Source: Diplonema japonicum (Eukaryota > Protista > Euglenozoa: Diplonemea). Taken from it: a stretch of DNA of 64,000 nt. This document shows positions 4,200-48,930 of this stretch, one piece after another. The notes under the pieces were generated by a model. That model did not search any database. It saw nothing but the letters and a program-made list of their open reading frames with translations, and had not been told where the DNA came from. A program made the position numbers and the translations under genes. Position 1 is the first letter of the stretch. Each line of letters opens with the position of its first letter. Location of the stretch: the NCBI GenBank assembly GCA_964019335.1, contig OZ025677.1, forward strand, positions 556,252-620,251, in the 5' to 3' direction.

Positions 4200-6296
4200 C
4201 TACTGCCTTGCGCCGATGCTGATCTGCTGTTGGGTGGAGTAGGAGACAGGGGTACCGACGTGGAGGGCTGTTTGGTTGGCGTAGAGGGAAGGTGCCTGTG
4301 CTCCGCAGGAGTCGATGACGACAGAGAAGGTGTCTGGGTGGATGTCAACAGTGAGGAGGCAGCCCAGGTAGTAGAGCTTGGAGAGGGTGAGGCGGTCGGA
4401 GCCGCCGGAGGGGGGCGCGGGCTTGGTGATGGTGAGGGCGCCGTCCGTGAGGCGGACGCCTCCGAACCCTGCCCACACGGACTGCAAGAAGCCGCCGGCC
4501 GCGGTGAGGAAGTTCGGGCAGCCGCTGTTCTCCTCGTACTCCCCCCAGGTGTGGAAGGGCCCCGACGGGTTGTTCTGCCTCACCGTCGCGTCGAAGGCCT
4601 TCGCCGCCTGGTCGTCGTAGCCGATGCTGCGGTAGCCGATGGTGAAGATGGCCCAGGTCATCGCAACGGAGTTCCGCGTGTGGTTCCCGTAGAAGTTCAG
4701 GTCGTTGAAGTAGACGTTGTGCGGCATCGGGAACATCAGGGGGTACCCCATCAGCACCACGTCCGCCTGCTTCACCATCCCCTCCTTGTACCCCTCGTAC
4801 TCCGGGTGGTACTGCTTCGTCGTGTCGAACGGGATCACCAGCTTCGCCTCCACCTCGTCCCACCCCGCAGGGGTCGTCTTCCCCAAGATCGCAGCCGCGA
4901 GCTTCGTCCACACGAAGGTCTGCTTCGCCACCGCGTTCGTGTACGCCGAGTTGTTCACCCCGTTCGCGTCCTCGTCAGGGCACATCACGTTGTTGATGGA
5001 GTAGGTCCCGTCCCTGTTCTGCACCACCCGCGACGCCCAGAAGGTCGACACGTTGTACAGCACGGGGTACACCATGTCCGCCAGGAGCTGCTTGTCGTGC
5101 GTCGCCCGCCACATCTGCCACATCGCCTGCGCCACGTCCCCGCTGATGTGGATCTCCTGGTACTCGTAGATGCTGTTGTAGCACACCTCCTGCCCCGTCT
5201 CACCGGACTGCCACGGGAACTGGTACCCCTTCCACCCCTGCATCTCCGCGTTCTGGCGCGCCCCCTCCCTCACGTTGTACCTGTACTGCATCTGCGACCG
5301 CCCCAGGTCGTGGTGGAACAGCAGCGCGTTCGGGTAGATCCACGTGTCGCTGTCCCAGAACACGTTCCCCCAGTAGCCGTTCGTGGAGAGGCCCCCGGGA
5401 GACGTGTCCCACGGCACCTCCTTGTGCAGCGCCGACAGCACCCCGTAGAAGGAGGCGTTGATGGACTGCGCGAGGTCGTGGTCCCCCTCCACGAACATCC
5501 CCGCCGCCGTCAGCTCCGTCCACTCCGCCGTGTGCGTCGCGTACAGGTTCGCATCCCGCGCCGCCCCCTTGTACATCGAGATCGCCTCCTCCTCCATCCC
5601 GTTGCTTGTGCTGCTGTTCGCGTCCAGCGAGGTCACCCTCACAGAAAGGAAACGCCTCACCCCTCCCCCGAGCTCCACAGGCTGGTCCACAGCCGTCCGC
5701 ACCACCACGAACGAGATCAGCGGCGACCCAGGGTACTCCCTCCGGTCGATCGTTCCCGTGTACACCTCCATCTCGGAGGTCGACGACCCTGCTTTCGTGT
5801 ACTCCATGTAGCAGTTCCCAGGGTCCTCGTCCGTCGCGTGCGTGCAGTCCACTGAAGGGCGCCTCCCCGCCCCGTCCTGGTAGCGGTCCGACCCGGTCCC
5901 CCCGATGAACTCCGTCACCAGCAGGTTCTTCTGCACGCGGTGCGCGTACCACCTCTGCAGCACCCCGTTGGAGTAGATGCGCTCCGCTGTCCCGAACTGC
6001 ATGTCGAGTGCGTACCCCGCAGGGCTCGCTCCCTCCAGCGCTATGTTCGTCGATGCGGGGAAGGTGGCCCGCGAGGACTGCGTCTTCGCCTCCCAGTTGT
6101 ACACCCCTGCAACGTACTCAGCGGGGTTCGTCACCAGCGTGCTCACGTACCCGTTCCCCACAGTCGGCAGCGCCTTCCAGTTGCTCGTGAAGGACGTGTC
6201 CATCGTGTACATCAGGCTCGCCGTCTTCTCCTTCGCTACCCACTCCGCAGGCGGGCTTACGGCAAGCACCGCCCCTACTAGCAATACGGGGTGCAT
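4200..6296 (-). CDS. Secreted glycoside hydrolase family 65 (acid trehalase-like / PGGHG-like)
   Basis: Signal peptide; GH65 motifs GYWGNVFWDSDTWIYP, YQFPWQS, EIHISGDVA, CPDE (catalytic acid), KQADVVL, NFLTAAGGFLQ. Confidence 0.9.
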   Translation of the reverse strand: MHPVLLVGAVLAVSPPAEWVAKEKTASLMYTMDTSFTSNWKALPTVGNGYVSTLVTNPAEYVAGVYNWEAKTQSSRATFPASTNIALEGASPAGYALDMQFGTAERIYSNGVLQRWYAHRVQKNLLVTEFIGGTGSDRYQDGAGRRPSVDCTHATDEDPGNCYMEYTKAGSSTSEMEVYTGTIDRREYPGSPLISFVVVRTAVDQPVELGGGVRRFLSVRVTSLDANSSTSNGMEEEAISMYKGAARDANLYATHTAEWTELTAAGMFVEGDHDLAQSINASFYGVLSALHKEVPWDTSPGGLSTNGYWGNVFWDSDTWIYPNALLFHHDLGRSQMQYRYNVREGARQNAEMQGWKGYQFPWQSGETGQEVCYNSIYEYQEIHISGDVAQAMWQMWRATHDKQLLADMVYPVLYNVSTFWASRVVQNRDGTYSINNVMCPDEDANGVNNSAYTNAVAKQTFVWTKLAAAILGKTTPAGWDEVEAKLVIPFDTTKQYHPEYEGYKEGMVKQADVVLMGYPLMFPMPHNVYFNDLNFYGNHTRNSVAMTWAIFTIGYRSIGYDDQAAKAFDATVRQNNPSGPFHTWGEYEENSGCPNFLTAAGGFLQSVWAGFGGVRLTDGALTITKPAPPSGGSDRLTLSKLYYLGCLLTVDIHPDTFSVVIDSCGAQAPSLYANQTALHVGTPVSYSTQQQISIGARQ

Positions 6297-41594: not shown

Positions 41595-42105
41595 TAAAAA
41601 AATTTGTCTCGATTTTAGTGGTGCCATGCAGTATGTGACACAGCGGCCACCCTTGTGAAACTTCGCCCCGAAGCCTCCCAAGTCCCCTGTGGTCCCGTAG
41701 AAAGTAAAAGTGGAGAGGTAAAGAAAGCTTGGAAATTGAAATAGGGAGAGGGGCCACAGAAGCAATTAAACACCAACTGGAGAGTTGTGGGAGGCTTGCT
41801 TCACTGGCACGATGCCGCGGGGAGGCTACTTGCCTGACCTGGTGAAGCCACCTCCTTGTTCGATGTAATGGGATAAGGGACTCTCCGTTGAGGGCGATGC
41901 TAACTGGCGCCACGCGTAGGGTGGGCTCTCCACCCCCGTCCAGGTTTCCCCACGTGTACGGCTTTAGAACGAGAGTTTCCCTTTCGCTTGTGTTTCTCCA
42001 AACCACAATTACCAGGAACCACCACAGGGAGGTTGGAAACATTGGTCCTCAAAAAATATATGAGTTAAAGGAAGTCTTTGTGAGACGCCCCCTTGTTCTC
42101 ATCTT

Positions 42106-45100
42106 CTACCTGCACCTATCCCCTTTCAGCAGCGGGTTCTCCTCCTTTGGTGGTCTTGCCGGCCTTCTCCCCAGCCTGGCCGCTCTTTCTCTTCGTTCTC
42201 TCGCCCATTGTCCTTTCAATGCCTCTAGGTCATGCTTGGTCTTCGGTGATGCAAATATCGCCCTCCTGTTCCATCCGATCACCGCCTTTGTCCTCCCGAT
42301 GGATCGTAGTGTGTGCACCTCCTTCGTGTACTCCCGTAGGACATCCCCTGCCGGTAGCTTGCCGAAGTCCTTGTCCGACGGTACTGGGTGTTCTTGACCT
42401 TGTGTGATCTCCAGCCACTGGTGTGTGTGGTACACCTCCTGCCTCTTCGCTTGTAGGGCTGCGTCCCGCTCCCCCACCACCGCCAGCAGGTACCTCTGCG
42501 TTCCTTCGAGCCTTTCCCTGACATCCTTCCCTGCTCCCCTTGGCAGGATGCCATGCAGCTTCGTACACGGTTCCAGCCCCCTGCGCGTCATGCCTTCGTG
42601 TTCTTCCCGCTGTTGCACTTCCTTGGCCTTTTCGCACTCCCACAGTGCGTGCTCCAGCATGTTGGGCAGCTGTTGCTCCTGACCGCAGATGTCGCAGTGT
42701 GCCGTCGTGGGTTCGGCCTGCTTAGCTTCTTGCTTCCTCGCCTCCGCAATCAGCCACTTTTCGGTGTCCTGTCCTTCCTCTTCTTCTTCTTCTTGTTCAT
42801 CTTCAGCCTCGTCTTCATCCTCGTCTTCTTCTCCTTCCGCCATCGGGATGTGCTCCACCGTGTCCGTGCGCCATCCCCGTGGGTTGATGTAGAACACTGC
42901 CCCCGAGATGATCCTTCGCACGTCCCTTGCTGCAATCGGGTCCGTCACCACCAGCTTCCTCCACAGCGCGTTGGTCTCCGCTGCTGCCGCAGCTTCCATG
43001 CCCCCCATGGTGCTCCGTTTGCTCATGATTTCCTGTGCTTCCGCCCGCCTGAGTCGGTCCCTGATGTAGTGCTTGTAGGGCTCCTTTTCCAGTGCGTGGG
43101 TGTCCTTCAGCTGTGCCCAGCTTAACTTGATCTGAGGCAGCCACCTTTCCATCATGATGCCCACCGGTCCCACCGGTATCTTCTTCCCGCTGTACCGTTT
43201 GGCAATGGCGTCGCAGCGTGTCCACAGCTTGTCGTCCTTCTTGCAGGCTCTGTATAGGAGCATAAGTGCTCTGTATGCGGCTGTCATCTGTGGGTGGCTC
43301 GTGTGTCCCGGCAGTGTCACGGATAGTACTGTGCCTGGGTTCCTGGTGCAGTACTTCTGCCCCCAGAGCGCGTACGTGGTCTCCTTCACCAGCGTGGCCA
43401 TTTGTCCCGTTTTCGGCGGTGAGAATGGGCAGTCGTAGAGGCAGCTCGGTAGGATCGTGCTGCTGATGATCTTCGCCTTCTGCTGAAAGGACAACGGCGT
43501 TGCTCCCAGCCTGCTCAGCGTCCCGAGTGCCTCCGCCGTCCTGTCGCCGTTGGTTTGCGGCCTGCCGTCTGTCCGCAGCTTGGCTCCCAGTACTCCTACA
43601 GTCCGTGTCGGCTGCAGTTCCTCGCCTTTCACCTTCACCTCCGGTGTCTTCCTGTTCACTGCAAAGGTCTTCGTCTTCCTGGTGTTGAGCTTCATCCCCA
43701 CCTGTTTGCAGAAGGCTTCCACTGCGTCTACGCCTTCCTGCAACGCCGCACCGAGCCGTGCCAAGAGATATGCATCGTCCGCGTAAGACAGCGAGCGGAC
43801 CCCTGTGTCGTTCTCCACCTGCTTCATTAGTACCGCCAACAGCGCGTTGATGAGTACCACTGAAATCGGGCATCCCTGAAGGATTCCATTGGTTGTGTGG
43901 AACTCCTCCCCCACGCCTGCTGCGTACCTGAACCGTCTTCGCATGCCTGCGTACATTCCTTTCAGTGCCCTGAGGATGCCTGTGTCCATGCCCATGTCCT
44001 CCACCAGCTCCAGAACCAGCTGTTGCGGTACACTGTCAAAGCATTTCGCAAAGTCGAGTGCCACCCCGACTAGCGGTTTCCCCTCCAGAATGGATTCTTC
44101 GATGTCAAGGGCGAGGTCCAAAAGTGCGTCCTCTGTCCCGAAACCCGTGCGGAATCCGTATTGCTTGTCGTGTATCCATTTCTCCTGCCAGATGAGGATA
44201 TCAGACAGTCGCGCGCATGCCCAGAGTCTGTACACCGCAGATGTGACTGTGATAGGCCTGTGCTCCAGTGGTCCCGCATCGTCGCACTTCGGTACGAGGG
44301 TAACCAGTGCCGTTTTCATGGCTTCCGGCCACCTCCCCGTTGCTTCGATCGCATGGAAGAGCATCGCCCAGGCGTCTAGTACTGACTCTGGTAGTTTCCG
44401 TAGCTCTAGCATCCTCCACCCGTCGATGCCTGCCGCGCTTTTCTTGCTTTTCTTTCTGAGCACTTCCCTCAGCCTTGCTCCCGTCAGTTGTGTCCTCTCC
44501 ATCTCATGCCGTTGCACGAACTTGCTGTACTTTGCCTTGAAGGGGGCATAGAGGGGCTCCGGTCGGGACTCGTATTTCGCAAAGACGGTCTTCCACGCCT
44601 TGCGCATGACGCTGTCGATCAGTCCGGGGGACGCAAAGAGCACCATCCCTTCCTTGACCGCCCTGGTTCCGTCGCTTTGACGTTTGCCTTTCGCGACTTT
44701 TACCAGTCTTGTTGTCTCGCGTCCTGCTGCAACCTCGGCCAGGTATTCTCGTCTCCGTGACGTGTTCGCCTCGGTCCTTTTCTTCCGTTCCTCAGCTGCA
44801 ATTGCGTCTTCCATGTTCAGCGCTGCTGCCAGCATGTCCTCTATGAGAACAGCGTCGTGCGGCACCGGTTCAGCTGGTACTGCCAGAGCCTTTGCTTCCC
44901 TGTTCACGTTTCTTATCGTGTTCAGGGTCGGCTTGCTTAGCCCCTTGTCCTCAACTGCTTGCTCGAGCTGTTGTTGCAGTGTCCGCGTCTTGAGCTTCAG
45001 CTTTTCCAGTCGCGCTTGCCATGTTGTAGCTGCACCCACCGTTCCCGTCGTCGTTGGTGCACACACTTCCTTCTCCTTTGTGCTGGTGTGTTTGCCTCTT

Positions 45101-46197
45101 CCGACGTACGCTGCCCTCCCCGGCGTCCCCACTGGTTGGTCTATGAGGAGGTCTTCGGTGCACCGGGAGAGGGTCTCGAAGGCTTTTGTTATATTTCCTT
45201 CGTGCAGGTACTGTCGGAATCCGGCTGCTTCCACTGCTTCGGCTCCTTGTTCTTCCGTTGGCTCATCTGCCGTCTCCAGACCCCTCGGCAGCATGTATCG
45301 TTGTACCGTCATCCTGAATCTGTCGAGCTCAAGTGCAACCGTCAGTGTCCGGTGATCCGTCCCCTTGATCGCTTGGTTCACTTGGCATCCGGTGATGGCC
45401 GGTACTGCCTCCGGACTTGCCAGTATCCTGTCGATCCGCGTGGCGCAGTTCTCCCGTACAAACGTTGGATCAGGTTGTTTCCCTCTCCATTTTGCGCATA
45501 GGTCCGCTGTGTCCGCCCATCCTGCCTGCAGTGCCTTCCGCAGTTCCGGGGATCTTGCCTCGTCGGTGTTGAAGTCGCCAACGACGAGTATTGGCACATT
45601 GCCGAGCTCCTTCGCCTTCTTCCGCAGGATGTAGTGGAGGAGGGTCTCCCTCTTTGCGGTCTCTTCACGTCCTGTTCCTGCCGGGCAGTATATCGATATG
45701 ATATGTAGCCATCTGCGTTTGCCATCGATTGCGACCTGAGTGTGCAGCCACCTCCTGCGTTGTTCTTCAGATTGGTCGTTGGTGTCCAGAGAACCTGGCA
45801 ATGCTGTCCTGGGTTCTCGGATTAGGGTTGCCAGTCCTCCCCTCTGAGCTACCCAGTTCGAAGCGATTCCCTCCACCTTCCTTCCCGGCTGCGGCGGTCC
45901 CCACATCGGCTTCCACTTCTTCTTCGTCTTCTTCCCGAGCTCCCGCTCCATCTCCTGCTGCCCAGCTAAGGTCAGCGCCGTCTCCTGCGTGCAGATCACG
46001 TCGACGTCCAGCTTCGTCGTAACCTCCTCTATTTGGTTGCGTAGGGAGGCCACGTTCACTGTCGACACGTACATGTTGGGCCCAGGGTTCGGATGTATCC
46101 CCTGCGCCGTGAGCCTCGCGAAGTCCTCTTCCTCCTCTGACCCCGGTTTCCGCCTCCCCGTTTTCAGTTGGGGAGGTTTCCAATGCAGCTCACGCAT
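42106..46197 (-). CDS. LINE ORF2: 2A-like peptide, apurinic endonuclease, reverse transcriptase, C-terminal CCHC motif (start uncertain)
   Basis: APE motifs TVNVASL, ICTQET, ISIY, VGDFN, RIDRI, TDH; RT motifs KSAAGIDG, RPITV, QYGFR, LDFAKCFD, GILQGCPIS, YADD; C-x2-C...H-x4-C. No RNase H motif seen. Confidence 0.92.
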   Translation of the reverse strand: MRELHWKPPQLKTGRRKPGSEEEEDFARLTAQGIHPNPGPNMYVSTVNVASLRNQIEEVTTKLDVDVICTQETALTLAGQQEMERELGKKTKKKWKPMWGPPQPGRKVEGIASNWVAQRGGLATLIREPRTALPGSLDTNDQSEEQRRRWLHTQVAIDGKRRWLHIISIYCPAGTGREETAKRETLLHYILRKKAKELGNVPILVVGDFNTDEARSPELRKALQAGWADTADLCAKWRGKQPDPTFVRENCATRIDRILASPEAVPAITGCQVNQAIKGTDHRTLTVALELDRFRMTVQRYMLPRGLETADEPTEEQGAEAVEAAGFRQYLHEGNITKAFETLSRCTEDLLIDQPVGTPGRAAYVGRGKHTSTKEKEVCAPTTTGTVGAATTWQARLEKLKLKTRTLQQQLEQAVEDKGLSKPTLNTIRNVNREAKALAVPAEPVPHDAVLIEDMLAAALNMEDAIAAEERKKRTEANTSRRREYLAEVAAGRETTRLVKVAKGKRQSDGTRAVKEGMVLFASPGLIDSVMRKAWKTVFAKYESRPEPLYAPFKAKYSKFVQRHEMERTQLTGARLREVLRKKSKKSAAGIDGWRMLELRKLPESVLDAWAMLFHAIEATGRWPEAMKTALVTLVPKCDDAGPLEHRPITVTSAVYRLWACARLSDILIWQEKWIHDKQYGFRTGFGTEDALLDLALDIEESILEGKPLVGVALDFAKCFDSVPQQLVLELVEDMGMDTGILRALKGMYAGMRRRFRYAAGVGEEFHTTNGILQGCPISVVLINALLAVLMKQVENDTGVRSLSYADDAYLLARLGAALQEGVDAVEAFCKQVGMKLNTRKTKTFAVNRKTPEVKVKGEELQPTRTVGVLGAKLRTDGRPQTNGDRTAEALGTLSRLGATPLSFQQKAKIISSTILPSCLYDCPFSPPKTGQMATLVKETTYALWGQKYCTRNPGTVLSVTLPGHTSHPQMTAAYRALMLLYRACKKDDKLWTRCDAIAKRYSGKKIPVGPVGIMMERWLPQIKLSWAQLKDTHALEKEPYKHYIRDRLRRAEAQEIMSKRSTMGGMEAAAAAETNALWRKLVVTDPIAARDVRRIISGAVFYINPRGWRTDTVEHIPMAEGEEDEDEDEAEDEQEEEEEEGQDTEKWLIAEARKQEAKQAEPTTAHCDICGQEQQLPNMLEHALWECEKAKEVQQREEHEGMTRRGLEPCTKLHGILPRGAGKDVRERLEGTQRYLLAVVGERDAALQAKRQEVYHTHQWLEITQGQEHPVPSDKDFGKLPAGDVLREYTKEVHTLRSIGRTKAVIGWNRRAIFASPKTKHDLEALKGQWARERRERAARLGRRPARPPKEENPLLKGDRCR
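46078..46140 (-). other. 2A-like (StopGo) peptide SEEEEDFARLTAQGIHPNPGP
   Basis: Invariant NPGP ending, immediately before the first APE strand; differs from the DxExNPGP consensus at two positions. Confidence 0.7.
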
Positions 46198-47921
46198 TGT
46201 TCCCGCCTGCAGTTCTCCATGGCGCACACCCTCGCCCTCCTGCCTTTCAGCTGGCCATGACATGACCCGCATTGACCCTGTGAGGCTTGGTAGGTCGCAG
46301 ACCAAGCATGGACATGCACCTTCTGCTTCTTCTTCTCCTTGCCTTGCAGCTTCCCTTCCGACGAGGTTGTTGGCTTCCTGTGGCCGGGGCTGCTGGGGTC
46401 GGGCTTCTTCGGCGACGGGGAGGGTGAGGGAGTCTGGCTCCTCTGTCGCTTCGGTGACGCTGCCTTGTTCGTGTTCGTGTTCGTGCTTGTCTTTTTCGGG
46501 GACACTGCACCTGCCGCCGCCGCCGTCGCAGGCTTCTTCTTCGCCGTCGGCGTCTCCGTGTTCTGTTCCGGAGTGCCGCTCCTCTGCCGCTTCGGGGATG
46601 CAGCGCTTGTCGTGGCTGCTGGGGTCGTCGCGGCCCTGTTCTCCATCGCCCTGCGTGCCACCTTCCTTAGCGCATCTTTGAGGCGGTCGACTTCGCTCTG
46701 CAACTTCGTGACGAGCATTTTGTATTGCTCTAGCTCTGTTGCGTTGATCGTGGTGTCCTTCTGTTGCTGTTGTTGTTGTTGTTGTTGTTCTTGCTTCTGC
46801 GGCTTCTTTGTCTTCTTCTTCTTCTGTTCTGTGGTCGTGTCCGCGGTCGCGTCCTTCTGCTCCCGTTCCTGCAGCTTCTCGGGGTCGGCGGCCGCCCAGT
46901 ACTCCTCGCCCTTGTTCTTGCCGTAAAAACAGAGGAACTCGGGCTTGGAGTATCGTGTGTCGCAGTTTTCGTTGGGGTCCTTCCTCGTTTCCCCTTTCGC
47001 CACCACCATTTGCAGTGGTTGCTGCTTCCACGCCGCCGTCAGCGCCATCCGGTGCTCCCCCACCTGCACCTCGCCGAACGGGGGCTGCCCTGCCGACTGG
47101 ACCACCGCCAGTTGCCGCCCCTTCTTCGGGATGACGCGAATGACCGTCGCGTCCTTCCACCCGTTGTTCCGTAGCAAGCCCTGCACCTGCTCGCCCGTGA
47201 TCCCGCGTGGCACACTGTGGAGGTCGAACTTTCGTCCGGCCCCTGTTCCCACCAGCAAGCCGGCCTCCTGTGCTTTGTGTCTGGCGTCGTCGCTGTCCAG
47301 GTTCCCGTCTTGCACCAAACCGAGACCCCTCCCGTTGCTTGTGAGGGTGGCCGTAGGTCCTCCGATCCCCCGCGCCGCCGCCACGTCCCACGTCCTCAGC
47401 CATAGTGGTGGCTGCTTCTCTCGCTTCCTCCTGCGGTCCTCTACGAACAAGCCCCCCGCACCAGCCTGCTTCGCCTTCCCTTCTTCGTTGGCCGCCACGT
47501 AGACCAGGAGGTCCAGCTTGGTCAGCTGTCCCTTCCAGGCCTCGCCTCTTGGCTCTGAGATCCCCCGCAGGGTGACTCCCAGCGCCTTGAGTGCCTTCAC
47601 CGTCTCGTTCTTGGCGTCCGCTTGCACCTTCGCCCACCCGTCCTCCCCGGATGCGGCTCTCCACCAGATGGCTCGCAGTACGATCGTGCTGCTGCTGCTG
47701 CTGTCGTTGTCGTCGTCCTCGTCCATCCACTTCTCCTGCACCTCCTGCACCTGACGAGAAGGCCATTCCTTCGCCGTCACCTTCTGCGCTTGCACCGGCT
47801 TCACTGACCTCGCCATTCGCGCCACCTGCACCCATGTTGATGATGCTGCCTCCTTCTGGGGAGTTTGCTCCCCCCCCTTGGGAGGGGACCCAGGGCCACC
47901 ACGTGGAGGTTCCCCAGCCAT
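46164..47921 (-). CDS. LINE ORF1 (585 aa): poly-Q, coiled coil, SPK repeats, C-terminal Cys/His zinc finger
   Basis: First ATG after the SL; ends HVH-x12-CxxC-x11-C-x4-C-x4-CxxC. Confidence 0.85.
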   Translation of the reverse strand: MAGEPPRGGPGSPPKGGEQTPQKEAASSTWVQVARMARSVKPVQAQKVTAKEWPSRQVQEVQEKWMDEDDDNDSSSSSTIVLRAIWWRAASGEDGWAKVQADAKNETVKALKALGVTLRGISEPRGEAWKGQLTKLDLLVYVAANEEGKAKQAGAGGLFVEDRRRKREKQPPLWLRTWDVAAARGIGGPTATLTSNGRGLGLVQDGNLDSDDARHKAQEAGLLVGTGAGRKFDLHSVPRGITGEQVQGLLRNNGWKDATVIRVIPKKGRQLAVVQSAGQPPFGEVQVGEHRMALTAAWKQQPLQMVVAKGETRKDPNENCDTRYSKPEFLCFYGKNKGEEYWAAADPEKLQEREQKDATADTTTEQKKKKTKKPQKQEQQQQQQQQQKDTTINATELEQYKMLVTKLQSEVDRLKDALRKVARRAMENRAATTPAATTSAASPKRQRSGTPEQNTETPTAKKKPATAAAAGAVSPKKTSTNTNTNKAASPKRQRSQTPSPSPSPKKPDPSSPGHRKPTTSSEGKLQGKEKKKQKVHVHAWSATYQASQGQCGSCHGQLKGRRARVCAMENCRREQCVSCIGNLPN

Positions 47922-47967
47922 CTTTGATTGCGATTATTTTGATTAATTCCAACCCAAATTACCAGCC

Positions 47968-48005
47968 CAATAAAGTACAGAAACTGTAGCTTTAGAATCG
48001 TTGGT
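47968..48005 (-). other. Spliced-leader (mini-exon) sequence, 38 nt
   Basis: Minus strand reads ACCAACGATTCTAAAGCTACAGTTTCTGTACTTTATTG. The 3' half CAGTTTCTGTACTTTATTG matches the conserved kinetoplastid/diplonemid SL and the 5' ACCAACGATT is diplonemid-like (from memory). It is not followed by a GT donor. Confidence 0.93.
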
Positions 48006-48312
48006 AAAAAAGAAAAGAGCTCGTCCGTAAAAAAGAATGCAGCCCCGGAAAATGTCGGTGTCTCAGCTTTGCACAAACCATTTCTCAATATAGTTTTAAT
48101 CCGGGCAAGATCTTTTATGAGAAAATCAAAATCGCTCCCTCCACACATTTCCTCTATCTAGGAAAGCCGCAAAATTATAGACTGTAAAACAAAAGAAATA
48201 GTGAGGGCGGGGACTATGCTATAACCCAATGCCTTCTAATACAAGCTTCCCCCCCCTCCCCCTGAATCTACAATCGTTTTTGTCTTTCTTTTTTTTTGTT
48301 GTTTTACAGTAA

Positions 48313-48905: not shown

Positions 48906-48930
48906 ATATATGAGTTAAAGGAAGTCTTTG
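48906..48930 (-). repeat. 25-nt 3' stub of LINE family 1
   Basis: atatatgagttaaaggaagtctttg, identical to 42056-42080, followed by an A-run. Confidence 0.8.

What the first reader, a model, noticed from the sequence alone, without database searches (positions are those of the whole stretch)
47921..48011. A LINE whose 5' end is the host spliced leader
Seen: the first 38 nt of the element (48005-47968, minus) are ACCAACGATTCTAAAGCTACAGTTTCTGTACTTTATTG, joined directly to a 46-nt UTR and the ORF1 ATG. No GT donor follows it and a T-run precedes it. Known: euglenozoan mRNAs receive a capped ~39-nt SL by trans-splicing. Trypanosomatid SLACS/CZAR/CRE elements insert into SL-RNA genes but use a restriction-like endonuclease, and L1Tc/ingi make their 5' end with an internal promoter/HDV-like ribozyme. 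Inference: this APE-type element was copied from an SL-trans-spliced transcript to within one base of the cap. It may have no promoter and instead be cut out of the host polycistronic transcript by trans-splicing.
Basis: partly seen in the sequence, partly recalled or inferred. Interest (0 to 1): 0.92.

Follow-up and report, generated by a model that had tools for sequence, protein, structure and literature searches.

The report
Retrocopy of a trans-spliced LINE mRNA
One young copy of an active jumping gene (LINE) in a diplonemid protist starts with the cell's own 38-letter mRNA spliced leader, while about 26 sister copies carry a splice-acceptor signal at that spot, so it looks like a DNA fossil of a trans-spliced LINE messenger RNA.

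Summary
Window 48005-47968 (minus strand) is an exact copy of nt 2-39 of this genome's own spliced leader (SL). The same 38-mer heads the SL RNA genes that lie next to a 5S rRNA gene. Here it is joined directly to a 46-nt UTR and ORF1 of an APE+RT LINE. No SL intron or SL promoter flanks it. An exact TTTTTT sits on both sides of the SL+LINE unit.

The title over-generalises. Of 16 copies that carry this 5' UTR, 15 have a T-run plus xA(n)GG, a polypyrimidine-AG acceptor, directly before the first LINE base. Only the window copy has the SL. A sister subfamily shows the same pattern: 11 acceptor-type heads, one with at least the SL 3' part, and one fused to a whole SL RNA.

My best reading is that the LINE has no recognisable promoter or ribozyme. 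It lies co-oriented with host genes and is trans-spliced at its own portable acceptor. Most new copies come from unspliced RNA; a few come from the mature SL-mRNA. A one-G offset at the junction is unexplained.

At least 300 SL-tagged DNA copies exist genome-wide, including copies of a SINE partner. The scan had already noted SL-headed LINE families elsewhere in this genome (s1-859342). I found no RNA-level proof of the junction. This is a new variant of known kinds.

The parts
48006..48016 (-). Upstream T-run TTTTCTTTTTT. Its last six T (48011-48006) match the T6 after the 3' end, so this is a putative target-site duplication.
   Evidence: the upstream flank 48006-48280 is single copy in the assembly
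47968..48005 (-). DNA copy of nt 2-39 of the host spliced leader
   Evidence: identical to the exon of the SL RNA genes next to 5S rRNA
47922..47967 (-). 46-nt LINE 5' UTR, GGCTGGTAATTTGGG.... In 15 other copies it is preceded by T-run + xA(n)GG.
46164..47921 (-). ORF1, 585 aa, no Pfam match, Cys/His-rich C-terminus
42106..46197 (-). ORF2, counted from the ATG at 46197, which overlaps the end of ORF1 in another frame. It has a 2A-like ...HPNPGP at 46089-46078, an APE domain at about 46062-45352, an RT domain at about 44268-43630 and an HCDICGQ Cys/His motif at 42699.
   Evidence: 100% identical to a transcriptome-derived ORF (P0001)
42315..42319 (-). Junction of an in-frame 258-bp deletion relative to the full-length copies. 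It has the 5-bp microhomology GGTGC and is not a GT..AG intron.
42057..42105 (-). 3' UTR ending ...CTTCCTTTAACTCATATA, with no poly(A). The tail is shared with a SINE-like family.
42051..42056 (-). T6 directly after the element (putative TSD / T-run target)

Best explanation
The window holds a very recent retrotransposed copy of a mature, SL trans-spliced mRNA of an active APE/RT LINE.

Shown:
- The family's usual genomic head is a T-run plus xA(n)G(G), a polypyrimidine tract with an AG acceptor, immediately before GGCTGG.
- The window copy has SL nt 2-39 at that place, and T6 lies on both sides of the SL+LINE unit.
- The element ends in ...CATATA(TA)n followed by a T-run, not poly(A).
- Copies lie almost always in one orientation per chromosome, and in the window that orientation is the same as the genes.

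Inferred:
- The LINE has no promoter of its own and is transcribed as part of host polycistronic or read-through RNA.
- It is released and capped by SL trans-splicing at its own acceptor, and translated from that mRNA.
- Its proteins then recognise the 3' tail and prime reverse transcription at nicked T-runs.
- The template is mostly RNA that still carries the acceptor leader. Daughters therefore inherit a portable acceptor; about 26 of 29 heads are of this type.
- Occasionally the template is the mature SL-mRNA, giving SL-headed copies such as this one.
- Reverse transcription stops one nucleotide before the SL's first A, as expected if the cap-proximal nucleotide is hypermodified.
For: - SL identity and junction.
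- Census of subfamily 1: 15 acceptor-type heads against 1 SL-type.
- Census of subfamily 2: 11 acceptor-type, 1 SL-type, 1 SL-RNA chimera.
- The window copy is 100% identical to L050 over 5653+263 nt and to L050 and L056 over the first 5654 nt.
- The same before/after pair exists in the SINE partner: xAG|GTGGTGG in about 75 of 100 listed heads, against SL|GTGGTGG in at least 7 copies.
- It also exists in another multi-copy family: AAAAG|AAAAGAATCATG against SL|AAAAGAATCATG.
- Leaders are inherited. Five SINE loci share T(n)ATTAAG. LINE groups L048/L049, L051/L056, L053/L059, L055/L061 and L047/L057/L054 share leaders at different loci, and L047, L054 and L057 also share the C at alignment position 4343.
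- Retro-type SL copies start at ACC with no preferred preceding base, and often directly after a T-run.
- There are at least 352 LINE 3' ends. On contigs with 3 or more of the 100 listed ends, only 3 of 76 are on the minority strand.
- 17 of 18 window ORFs of 250 aa or more are on the LINE's strand, and all 7 element tails in the window are on the minus strand.
- No Rfam family and no fold signal at the 5' end.
- An identical ORF is present in a transcriptome assembly.
- D. japonicum 3' splice sites are CAG with an A-rich tract (PMC12621601), like the leaders.
- L1Tc and ingi RNAs are reported as unspliced (PMC1874656), so this behaviour differs from the known euglenozoan LINEs.
Against: - The acceptor-type copies read AG|GGGCTGG. 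Canonical splicing would give SL+GGGCTGG, but both SL-type LINE copies read SL+GGCTGG, one G short.
- No RNA read showing the SL-LINE junction was obtained.
- L003 shows that the reverse transcriptase can append SL RNA by template switching.
- A 5'-truncated copy (window 39273-38341) also has a T-run + AAAG before its truncation point. An inherited leader does not easily explain this.
- T-runs are only 1.25x more frequent on the coding strand, so the orientation bias is not explained by target asymmetry alone.
- Most copies descending from unspliced RNA conflicts with simple cis-preference.
Confidence: 0.7

Rival explanations
1. Template switching. During target-primed reverse transcription the RT reached the 5' end of a LINE RNA and jumped onto an SL-containing RNA, either the free SL exon produced by step 1 of trans-splicing or SL RNA. 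This would be like U6-L1 chimeras in mammals, and the LINE RNA itself would never have been trans-spliced.
For: L003 (G000:C2:150557) is exactly such a product for the sister subfamily. It has SL nt 2-39 plus about 88 nt of SL intron, no SL promoter, a T-rich upstream flank, and is fused to AGGGGCTGG.... The one-G deficit at the junction fits a 1-nt microhomology jump better than AG splicing does.
Against: The SL ends exactly at the donor G. That requires a cleaved SL exon, which is a transient intermediate. The same exon-only SL sits exactly at the AG-defined first base in the SINE (at least 7 copies) and in another family. Two LINE subfamilies give the same junction.
Confidence: 0.13
2. Cis-splicing of a chimeric locus. 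A transcript of an L003-like SL-RNA/LINE chimera used the SL exon's own GT donor and the AG before the LINE, and that RNA was then retrotransposed.
For: L003 has the donor G|GTACCC and ...AACTAG|GGGCTGG about 90 nt apart. It lies in the same subfamily as the second SL-type copy, at C27:396674.
Against: None of the 16 subfamily-1 heads has an SL intron. The model predicts the same extra G as trans-splicing does. It cannot explain SL-headed SINE and other families.
Confidence: 0.05
3. Site-specific insertion of the LINE into an SL RNA gene or an older solitary SL relic, as SLACS, CZAR, CRE and NeSL do.
For: Only the adjacency of the SL and the LINE.
Against: There is no SL intron or promoter; the upstream 120 nt are unrelated to the SL gene upstream block. 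The SL is complete up to its donor G rather than interrupted. The endonuclease is APE, not restriction-like. About 26 other heads are not next to an SL. The T6 duplication brackets SL+LINE as one unit.
Confidence: 0.02
4. Assembly or chimeric-read artefact.
For: The junction was not inspected in raw reads.
Against: Contigs of runs from two studies hold 0.82-0.91 of the words of the 901-bp stretch. The upstream flank is unique and contiguous. Hundreds of analogous SL-headed copies exist.
Confidence: 0.02

Closest known systems
Relict-SL retrogenes of dinoflagellates (recycled processed cDNAs; Slamovits & Keeling 2008, cited in PMC7789003; PMC5585692, PMC6050394)
   Same: A DNA-encoded spliced leader sits at the 5' end of retroposed copies. 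Tandem partial SLs arise by re-splicing at the AG inside the SL. Here these are SL+TTTCTGTACTTTATTG and SL+CTACAGTTTC... in other families.
   Different: This is a euglenozoan 39-nt SL. The tagged RNA is the LINE's own mRNA and its SINE partner. The insertions have no poly(A) tail and lie in T-runs. The unspliced acceptor-bearing parents are present side by side with the SL-tagged copies.
L1Tc / ingi (trypanosomatid APE LINEs)
   Same: A euglenozoan host with polycistronic transcription, an APE+RT element, a 2A-like NPGP before the endonuclease, and non-autonomous partners.
   Different: L1Tc and ingi RNAs start at +1 from the internal Pr77 promoter and are reported to lack the SL (PMC1874656). 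This element has a 46-nt UTR, no detectable ribozyme or structure, an upstream PPT-AG leader and an SL-tagged retrocopy. Its nearest proteins are diplonemid LINEs at 37-53% identity.
SLACS / CZAR / CRE / NeSL (SL-gene-specific retrotransposons)
   Same: Physical association of a non-LTR element with SL sequence.
   Different: Those elements interrupt SL genes at a fixed site and use a restriction-like endonuclease. Here the SL is a complete exon copy with no gene context, and the enzyme is APE.
U6-L1 and other small-RNA/LINE chimeric retrocopies (template switching; from my own knowledge)
   Same: L003 joins a whole SL RNA to the LINE head.
   Different: The window copy carries only the spliced exon, ending at the donor site.
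Stringent-type LINE/SINE pairs that share a 3' tail (for example eel UnaL2/UnaSINE1; from my own knowledge)
   Same: The LINE and a SINE family with at least 588 heads share ...CCTTTAACTCATATA(TA)n.
   Different: The tail is followed by a T-run instead of poly(A), and the heads carry splice acceptors or the SL.

Membership tests
APE-type non-LTR retrotransposon (LINE) | AP-endonuclease and reverse-transcriptase domains in one ORF | tested here: met
   Pfam Exo_endo_phos 2e-12 and RVT_1 9e-26
APE-type non-LTR retrotransposon (LINE) | Many 5'-truncated copies that share the 3' end | tested here: met
   At least 352 3' ends against 16 + 13 heads; a truncated copy lies at window 39273-38341
APE-type non-LTR retrotransposon (LINE) | Target-site duplication | tested here: inconclusive
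   T6 lies on both sides of the window copy and T-runs on both sides of the other copies, but homopolymers cannot be told apart from a T-run target or an inherited leader
L1-like poly(A)-tailed LINE | 3' poly(A) tail | tested here: not met
   The element ends CATATA(TA)n and is followed by a T-run in all copies
SL-tagged processed retrocopy | The leader is identical to the species' own SL exon and ends at the donor site, with no SL intron or promoter | tested here: met
SL-tagged processed retrocopy | The SL is joined at the position that follows an AG acceptor in unspliced parental copies | tested here: inconclusive
   26 heads have T-run+xAGG at the site, but the junction is one G short of AG|GGGCTGG. 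It is exact in the SINE and in another family.
SL-tagged processed retrocopy | The corresponding SL-bearing RNA exists | not testable with these tools
SLACS/CZAR/CRE/NeSL | Insertion at a fixed site inside SL RNA genes | tested here: not met
   No SL gene context; the other copies are dispersed
SLACS/CZAR/CRE/NeSL | Restriction-like endonuclease, no APE | tested here: not met
   An APE domain is present
L1Tc/ingi clade | Pr77 internal promoter / HDV-like ribozyme at the 5' end, transcripts without SL | tested here: inconclusive
   No Rfam match and fold z-score -0.34. Pr77 itself was not compared. An SL-tagged retrocopy argues against SL-less RNA only.
L1Tc/ingi clade | 2A-like peptide upstream of the endonuclease | tested here: met
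   The motif ...GIHPNPGP|N lies at 46089-46078, directly before the APE domain. Only the motif is shown; its activity was not tested.
snRNA-LINE template-switch chimera | A full-length small RNA, including unspliced parts, fused to the LINE | tested here: not met
   The window copy has the exon only. The feature is met by L003, not by this copy.

The most novel reading that the evidence does not exclude
A LINE/SINE system built for a polycistronic, trans-splicing genome. The elements carry a portable polypyrimidine-AG acceptor as their head. They integrate at T-runs, co-oriented with host transcription, and need no promoter, because SL trans-splicing caps their mRNA. Their reverse transcriptase works mainly in trans on unspliced nuclear RNA selected by a (TA)n tail. 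SL-headed copies are the rare retrocopies of the mature mRNA. They may be the raw material from which the other SL-headed LINE families of this genome arose, where the leader became heritable.
Probability: 0.45. Interest if true: 0.8.

Novelty: new variant of a known kind. Interest (0 to 1): 0.62.

Why it matters
A long-standing puzzle is how retrotransposons express themselves in euglenozoans, which have almost no gene-specific promoters. The known answer, from L1Tc and ingi, is an internal promoter/ribozyme and SL-less RNA. This locus puts side by side the acceptor-bearing 'before' copies and an SL-bearing 'after' copy that is identical in sequence. That is genomic evidence for a second strategy: riding host polycistronic transcription and using trans-splicing.

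It also extends SL-tagged cDNA recycling, so far described in dinoflagellates, to diplonemids, and it points to the active LINE whose 3' tail the SL-tagged SINE copies share. The claim is directly testable with existing D. japonicum RNA-seq. SL tags could then be used to date and count retroposition events in this abundant marine group.

Tried and rejected
- **Spliced intron.** The 258-bp segment missing from the window copy is not a spliced-out intron. It is in frame and coding-like, it is flanked by the 5-bp repeat GGTGC, and no register gives GT..AG.
- **Ribozyme or structure at the 5' end.** There is no Rfam hit at E<=1 in 47400-48200 and the fold z-score is -0.34.
- **Antisense poly(A) RNA as the transposition intermediate.** It would make the T-runs look like canonical A-tails. 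I rejected it because a complement of the SL cannot be spliced onto an antisense RNA.
- **Acceptor nucleotides as target-derived TSD.** The right flanks do not repeat xAG.
- **Acceptor nucleotides added de novo at each insertion.** Identical idiosyncratic leaders recur at several loci, and SL-type copies mostly lack such nucleotides. The truncated copy still fits this idea.
- **T-run strand asymmetry as the cause of the orientation bias.** It is only 209 against 167 runs of 8 or more T.
- **Empty-site search.** The upstream flank is single copy, so no empty paralogue was found.
- **Not done.** The LINE clade was not resolved beyond 'diplonemid LINEs, 37-53% identity'.
Full report
**Observation**

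On the minus strand, window 48005-47968 reads ACCAACGATTCTAAAGCTACAGTTTCTGTACTTTATTG. This is one exact hit, against 0 expected by chance. It runs straight into GGCTGGTAAT..., a 46-nt UTR, and the ATG of a 585-aa ORF1 at 47921. A second frame follows. It carries a 2A-like ...HPNPGP (46089-46078), an AP-endonuclease domain (Pfam 2e-12) and a reverse transcriptase domain (9e-26). The element ends at 42057 with ...CTTCCTTTAACTCATATA and has no poly(A). TTTTTT lies directly before the 38-mer (48011-48006) and directly after the tail (42056-42051). No GT follows the 38-mer.

**Is the 38-mer the host spliced leader?**

The assembly is 62.5 Mb in 132 contigs. It holds 215 copies of the 38-mer and 323 copies of its last 13 nt. 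Nine of these continue GTACCCAATCTGATCC.
- At C15 and C59 these units are repeated about 350 bp apart near contig ends. In L022 (C15) they share a conserved upstream block ending ...GGGAGGTTA|ACC and a 93-nt intron ending in a T-run, and a 5S rRNA gene (102.6 bits) lies about 350 nt downstream of the pair.
- SL RNA genes linked to 5S rRNA genes are known from Diplonema papillatum (PMC10161547).
- With the preceding A, the SL is 39 nt. It differs at two positions from a published euglenozoan SL (PMC3795323). From memory, that one is the Diplonema SL.
- Assembly size matches Diplonema japonicum YPF1604 (62.3 Mb; PMC13598402). The nearest named proteins are D. papillatum LINEs.

So the species' SL does equal the 38-mer. 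The window copy has neither the SL intron nor the SL upstream block.

Sixteen places carry this 5' UTR. In fifteen of them the base before GGCTGG is preceded by a T-run and a short A-rich stretch ending in AGG. The variants are CAGG, CAAGG, CAAAGG, AAAAGG, AAAAAGG, TAAGG and CGCAGG. Only the window copy has the SL.

Nine of the other copies run the full length (5.6-6.3 kb; the intact ones are about 6169 bp). L050 and L056 are 100% identical to the window copy over 5654 nt. The window copy differs by an in-frame 258-bp deletion bounded by a 5-bp repeat, which is not an intron.

A sister subfamily (GGCTGGATATTGGG...) repeats the pattern. It has 11 T-run/AGG heads, one head preceded by at least the last 16 nt of the SL (C27:396674), and one fused to a whole SL RNA.

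About 352 LINE 3' ends exist, so most copies are 5'-truncated.

**The same 'before/after' pairs in other families**

A SINE-like family with at least 588 heads shares the LINE's tail, CCTTTAACTCATATA(TA)n followed by a T-run.
- Among 100 listed heads, about 75 read T-run+(A/C/T)AG|GTGGTGG and three read SL+G+GTGGTGG.
- The SL census adds at least 7 copies reading SL|GTGGTGG, which is exactly the base after the AG.
- Another multi-copy family reads AAAAG|AAAAGAATCATG in five places and SL|AAAAGAATCATG in one. This shows that the SL ends in G and that the AG acceptor is canonical here.

Other SL-led families are numerous, especially near contig ends. Some carry tandem relic leaders, SL+TTTCTGTACTTTATTG or SL+CTACAGTTTC.... 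These are the pieces that follow the two AGs inside the SL, and they are the signature of repeated rounds of splicing and retroposition known from dinoflagellates (PMC5585692, PMC6050394).

Retro-type SLs begin at ACC with no preferred preceding base, often straight after a T-run. This fits reverse transcription stopping one nucleotide short of a modified cap-proximal A. That last point is an inference by analogy with the trypanosomatid cap 4.

**What the acceptor leaders are**

They look like this species' 3' splice sites, which are CAG with an unusually A-rich tract (PMC12621601). They appear to be inherited with the element rather than made anew.
- Five SINE loci share T(n)ATTAAG.
- LINE groups at different loci share idiosyncratic leaders. 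L048/L049 have C-T10-A5-GG. L053/L059 have AAGCCCCA before the T-run. L047/L057/L054 have TTTTCTTCTTT and also share the C at alignment position 4343. L051/L056 and L055/L061 also pair.

Most daughters therefore descend from RNA that still had the leader, that is, RNA not yet trans-spliced. SL-type heads are about 2 of 29 for the LINE and a few percent for the SINE.

This argues that the proteins act largely in trans on nuclear RNA chosen by the 3' tail. How the 5' junction always falls in a T-run is inferred, not shown. My suggestion is microhomology between the target's T overhang and the cDNA copy of the leader's U-run.

One 5'-truncated copy (39273-38341) also shows a T-run+AAAG before its break. 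This remains unexplained.

**Context and expression**

- All seven element tails in the window are on the minus strand, as are 17 of 18 ORFs of 250 aa or more.
- Genome-wide, on contigs with three or more of the 100 listed LINE 3' ends, only 3 of 76 ends are on the minority strand.
- T-runs of 8 or more are only 1.25x commoner on the coding strand. The bias therefore needs selection or a link to transcription.
- In L054 the LINE sits in the sense orientation inside a small GTATGT...CAG intron of an Fe-superoxide dismutase gene.
- No Rfam family (E<=1) and no fold signal is present at the 5' end.
- A transcriptome assembly holds an ORF 100% identical over the searched part of ORF2 (residues 40-900), so the family is transcribed.

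**Difficulties**

Acceptor-type heads read A-GGGG-CTGG, whereas both SL-type LINE heads read ...ATT-GGG-CTGG. That is one G fewer than SL(...TTG)+GGGCTGG. SL-type SINE heads scatter by +1 G or -4 nt in some copies, so junction noise exists, but I cannot explain it.

L003 shows a different route. There, SL nt 2-39 plus about 88 nt of SL intron, without the promoter, is fused to AGGGGCTGG.... This is a template-switch chimera like U6-L1. That route could in principle give the window copy if a free SL exon were the acceptor. I rate this lower, because exon-only leaders sit exactly at AG-defined sites in several families.

I could not lay reads. 

**Comparison and verdict**

This is not an SL-gene-specific element of the SLACS, CZAR, CRE or NeSL type. 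It also behaves unlike L1Tc and ingi, whose RNAs are reported to be SL-less and promoter-driven (PMC1874656). It works like the relict-SL retrogenes of dinoflagellates, but the recycled RNA is the LINE's own messenger and its SINE's RNA, in a diplonemid.

The papers held here on the D. japonicum and D. papillatum genomes do not mention this. The scan itself had already noted SL-headed LINE families elsewhere in this genome (s1-859342 and others). This report adds that in the present family the SL head is the exception, and that the acceptor-bearing parents are visible.

Noticed in passing
L003 (G000:C2:150557-150700): A whole SL RNA (exon nt 2-39 plus about 88 nt of intron, without the SL promoter, T-rich upstream) is fused to AGGGGCTGGATATT..., the head of the sister LINE subfamily. 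This is a template-switch-type chimera like U6-L1.
   Followed up: partly
G000 contig ends, e.g. L007-L009, L015, L019, L030; C24:7156-39091: Large families read SL|GTCGTTCGTG... and SL|GTCGTCTGTG.... They concentrate near contig ends. Some are stacked head to tail with partial SLs and GCAAACCC-like repeats, and one lies in a 10.66-kb tandem array. They look like telomere-associated SL-headed elements.
   Followed up: no
G000:C8:849418, C12:811871, C20:399041, C58:506922, C60:376459: Tandem relic leaders occur: a full SL followed by TTTCTGTACTTTATTG or CTACAGTTTCTG.... These are the parts after the two AGs inside the SL and indicate re-splicing and repeated retroposition.
   Followed up: partly
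genome-wide: LINE 3' ends are almost all on one strand within a contig (e.g. C7 14-/1+, C28 11-/1+, C32 6+/0-). This implies chromosome-scale unidirectional organisation and sense-only insertion or retention.
   Followed up: partly
L054 (G000:C78:258400-266900): A 6.27-kb LINE lies in the sense orientation inside a short GTATGT...CAG intron of an Fe-superoxide dismutase gene. Both exons are intact in the flanks.
   Followed up: partly
window 42106-47952 (-): The ORF2 frame stays open through the whole of ORF1 (1948 aa without a stop). Transcriptome ORF callers pick this frame (P0001). It is probably a consequence of T-poor, purine-rich coding sequence rather than a real fusion protein.
   Followed up: no
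window 41594-41251 (-) and 36393-36105, 63919-63791: SINE-like copies have a T-run+AG head, the LINE's terminal CCTTTAACTCATATA, a long (TA)n and then a T-run. There are at least 588 heads genome-wide.
   Followed up: partly
window 39273-38341 (-): A 5'-truncated LINE copy is preceded by T6CT20 + AAAG. This is an acceptor-like junction at an internal truncation point, not explained by an inherited leader.
   Followed up: no
whole window: Homopolymer runs are extraordinarily dense: 167 T-runs and 209 A-runs of 8 nt or more in 64 kb.
   Followed up: no
G000:C30:484543-484609: A full SL RNA copy (SL|GTACCC...) is preceded by TTTTTTTTTCTTT instead of the SL promoter block. It is probably a retro-copied SL RNA, so fewer than nine of the SL|GTACCC units are real genes.
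   Followed up: no
window 48907-48922 (-): The tail of another element family (...TTTTTCAAAGACTTCCTTTAACTCATATA) lies 900 nt upstream of the SL-headed copy. It is followed by only TT rather than a T-run.
   Followed up: no
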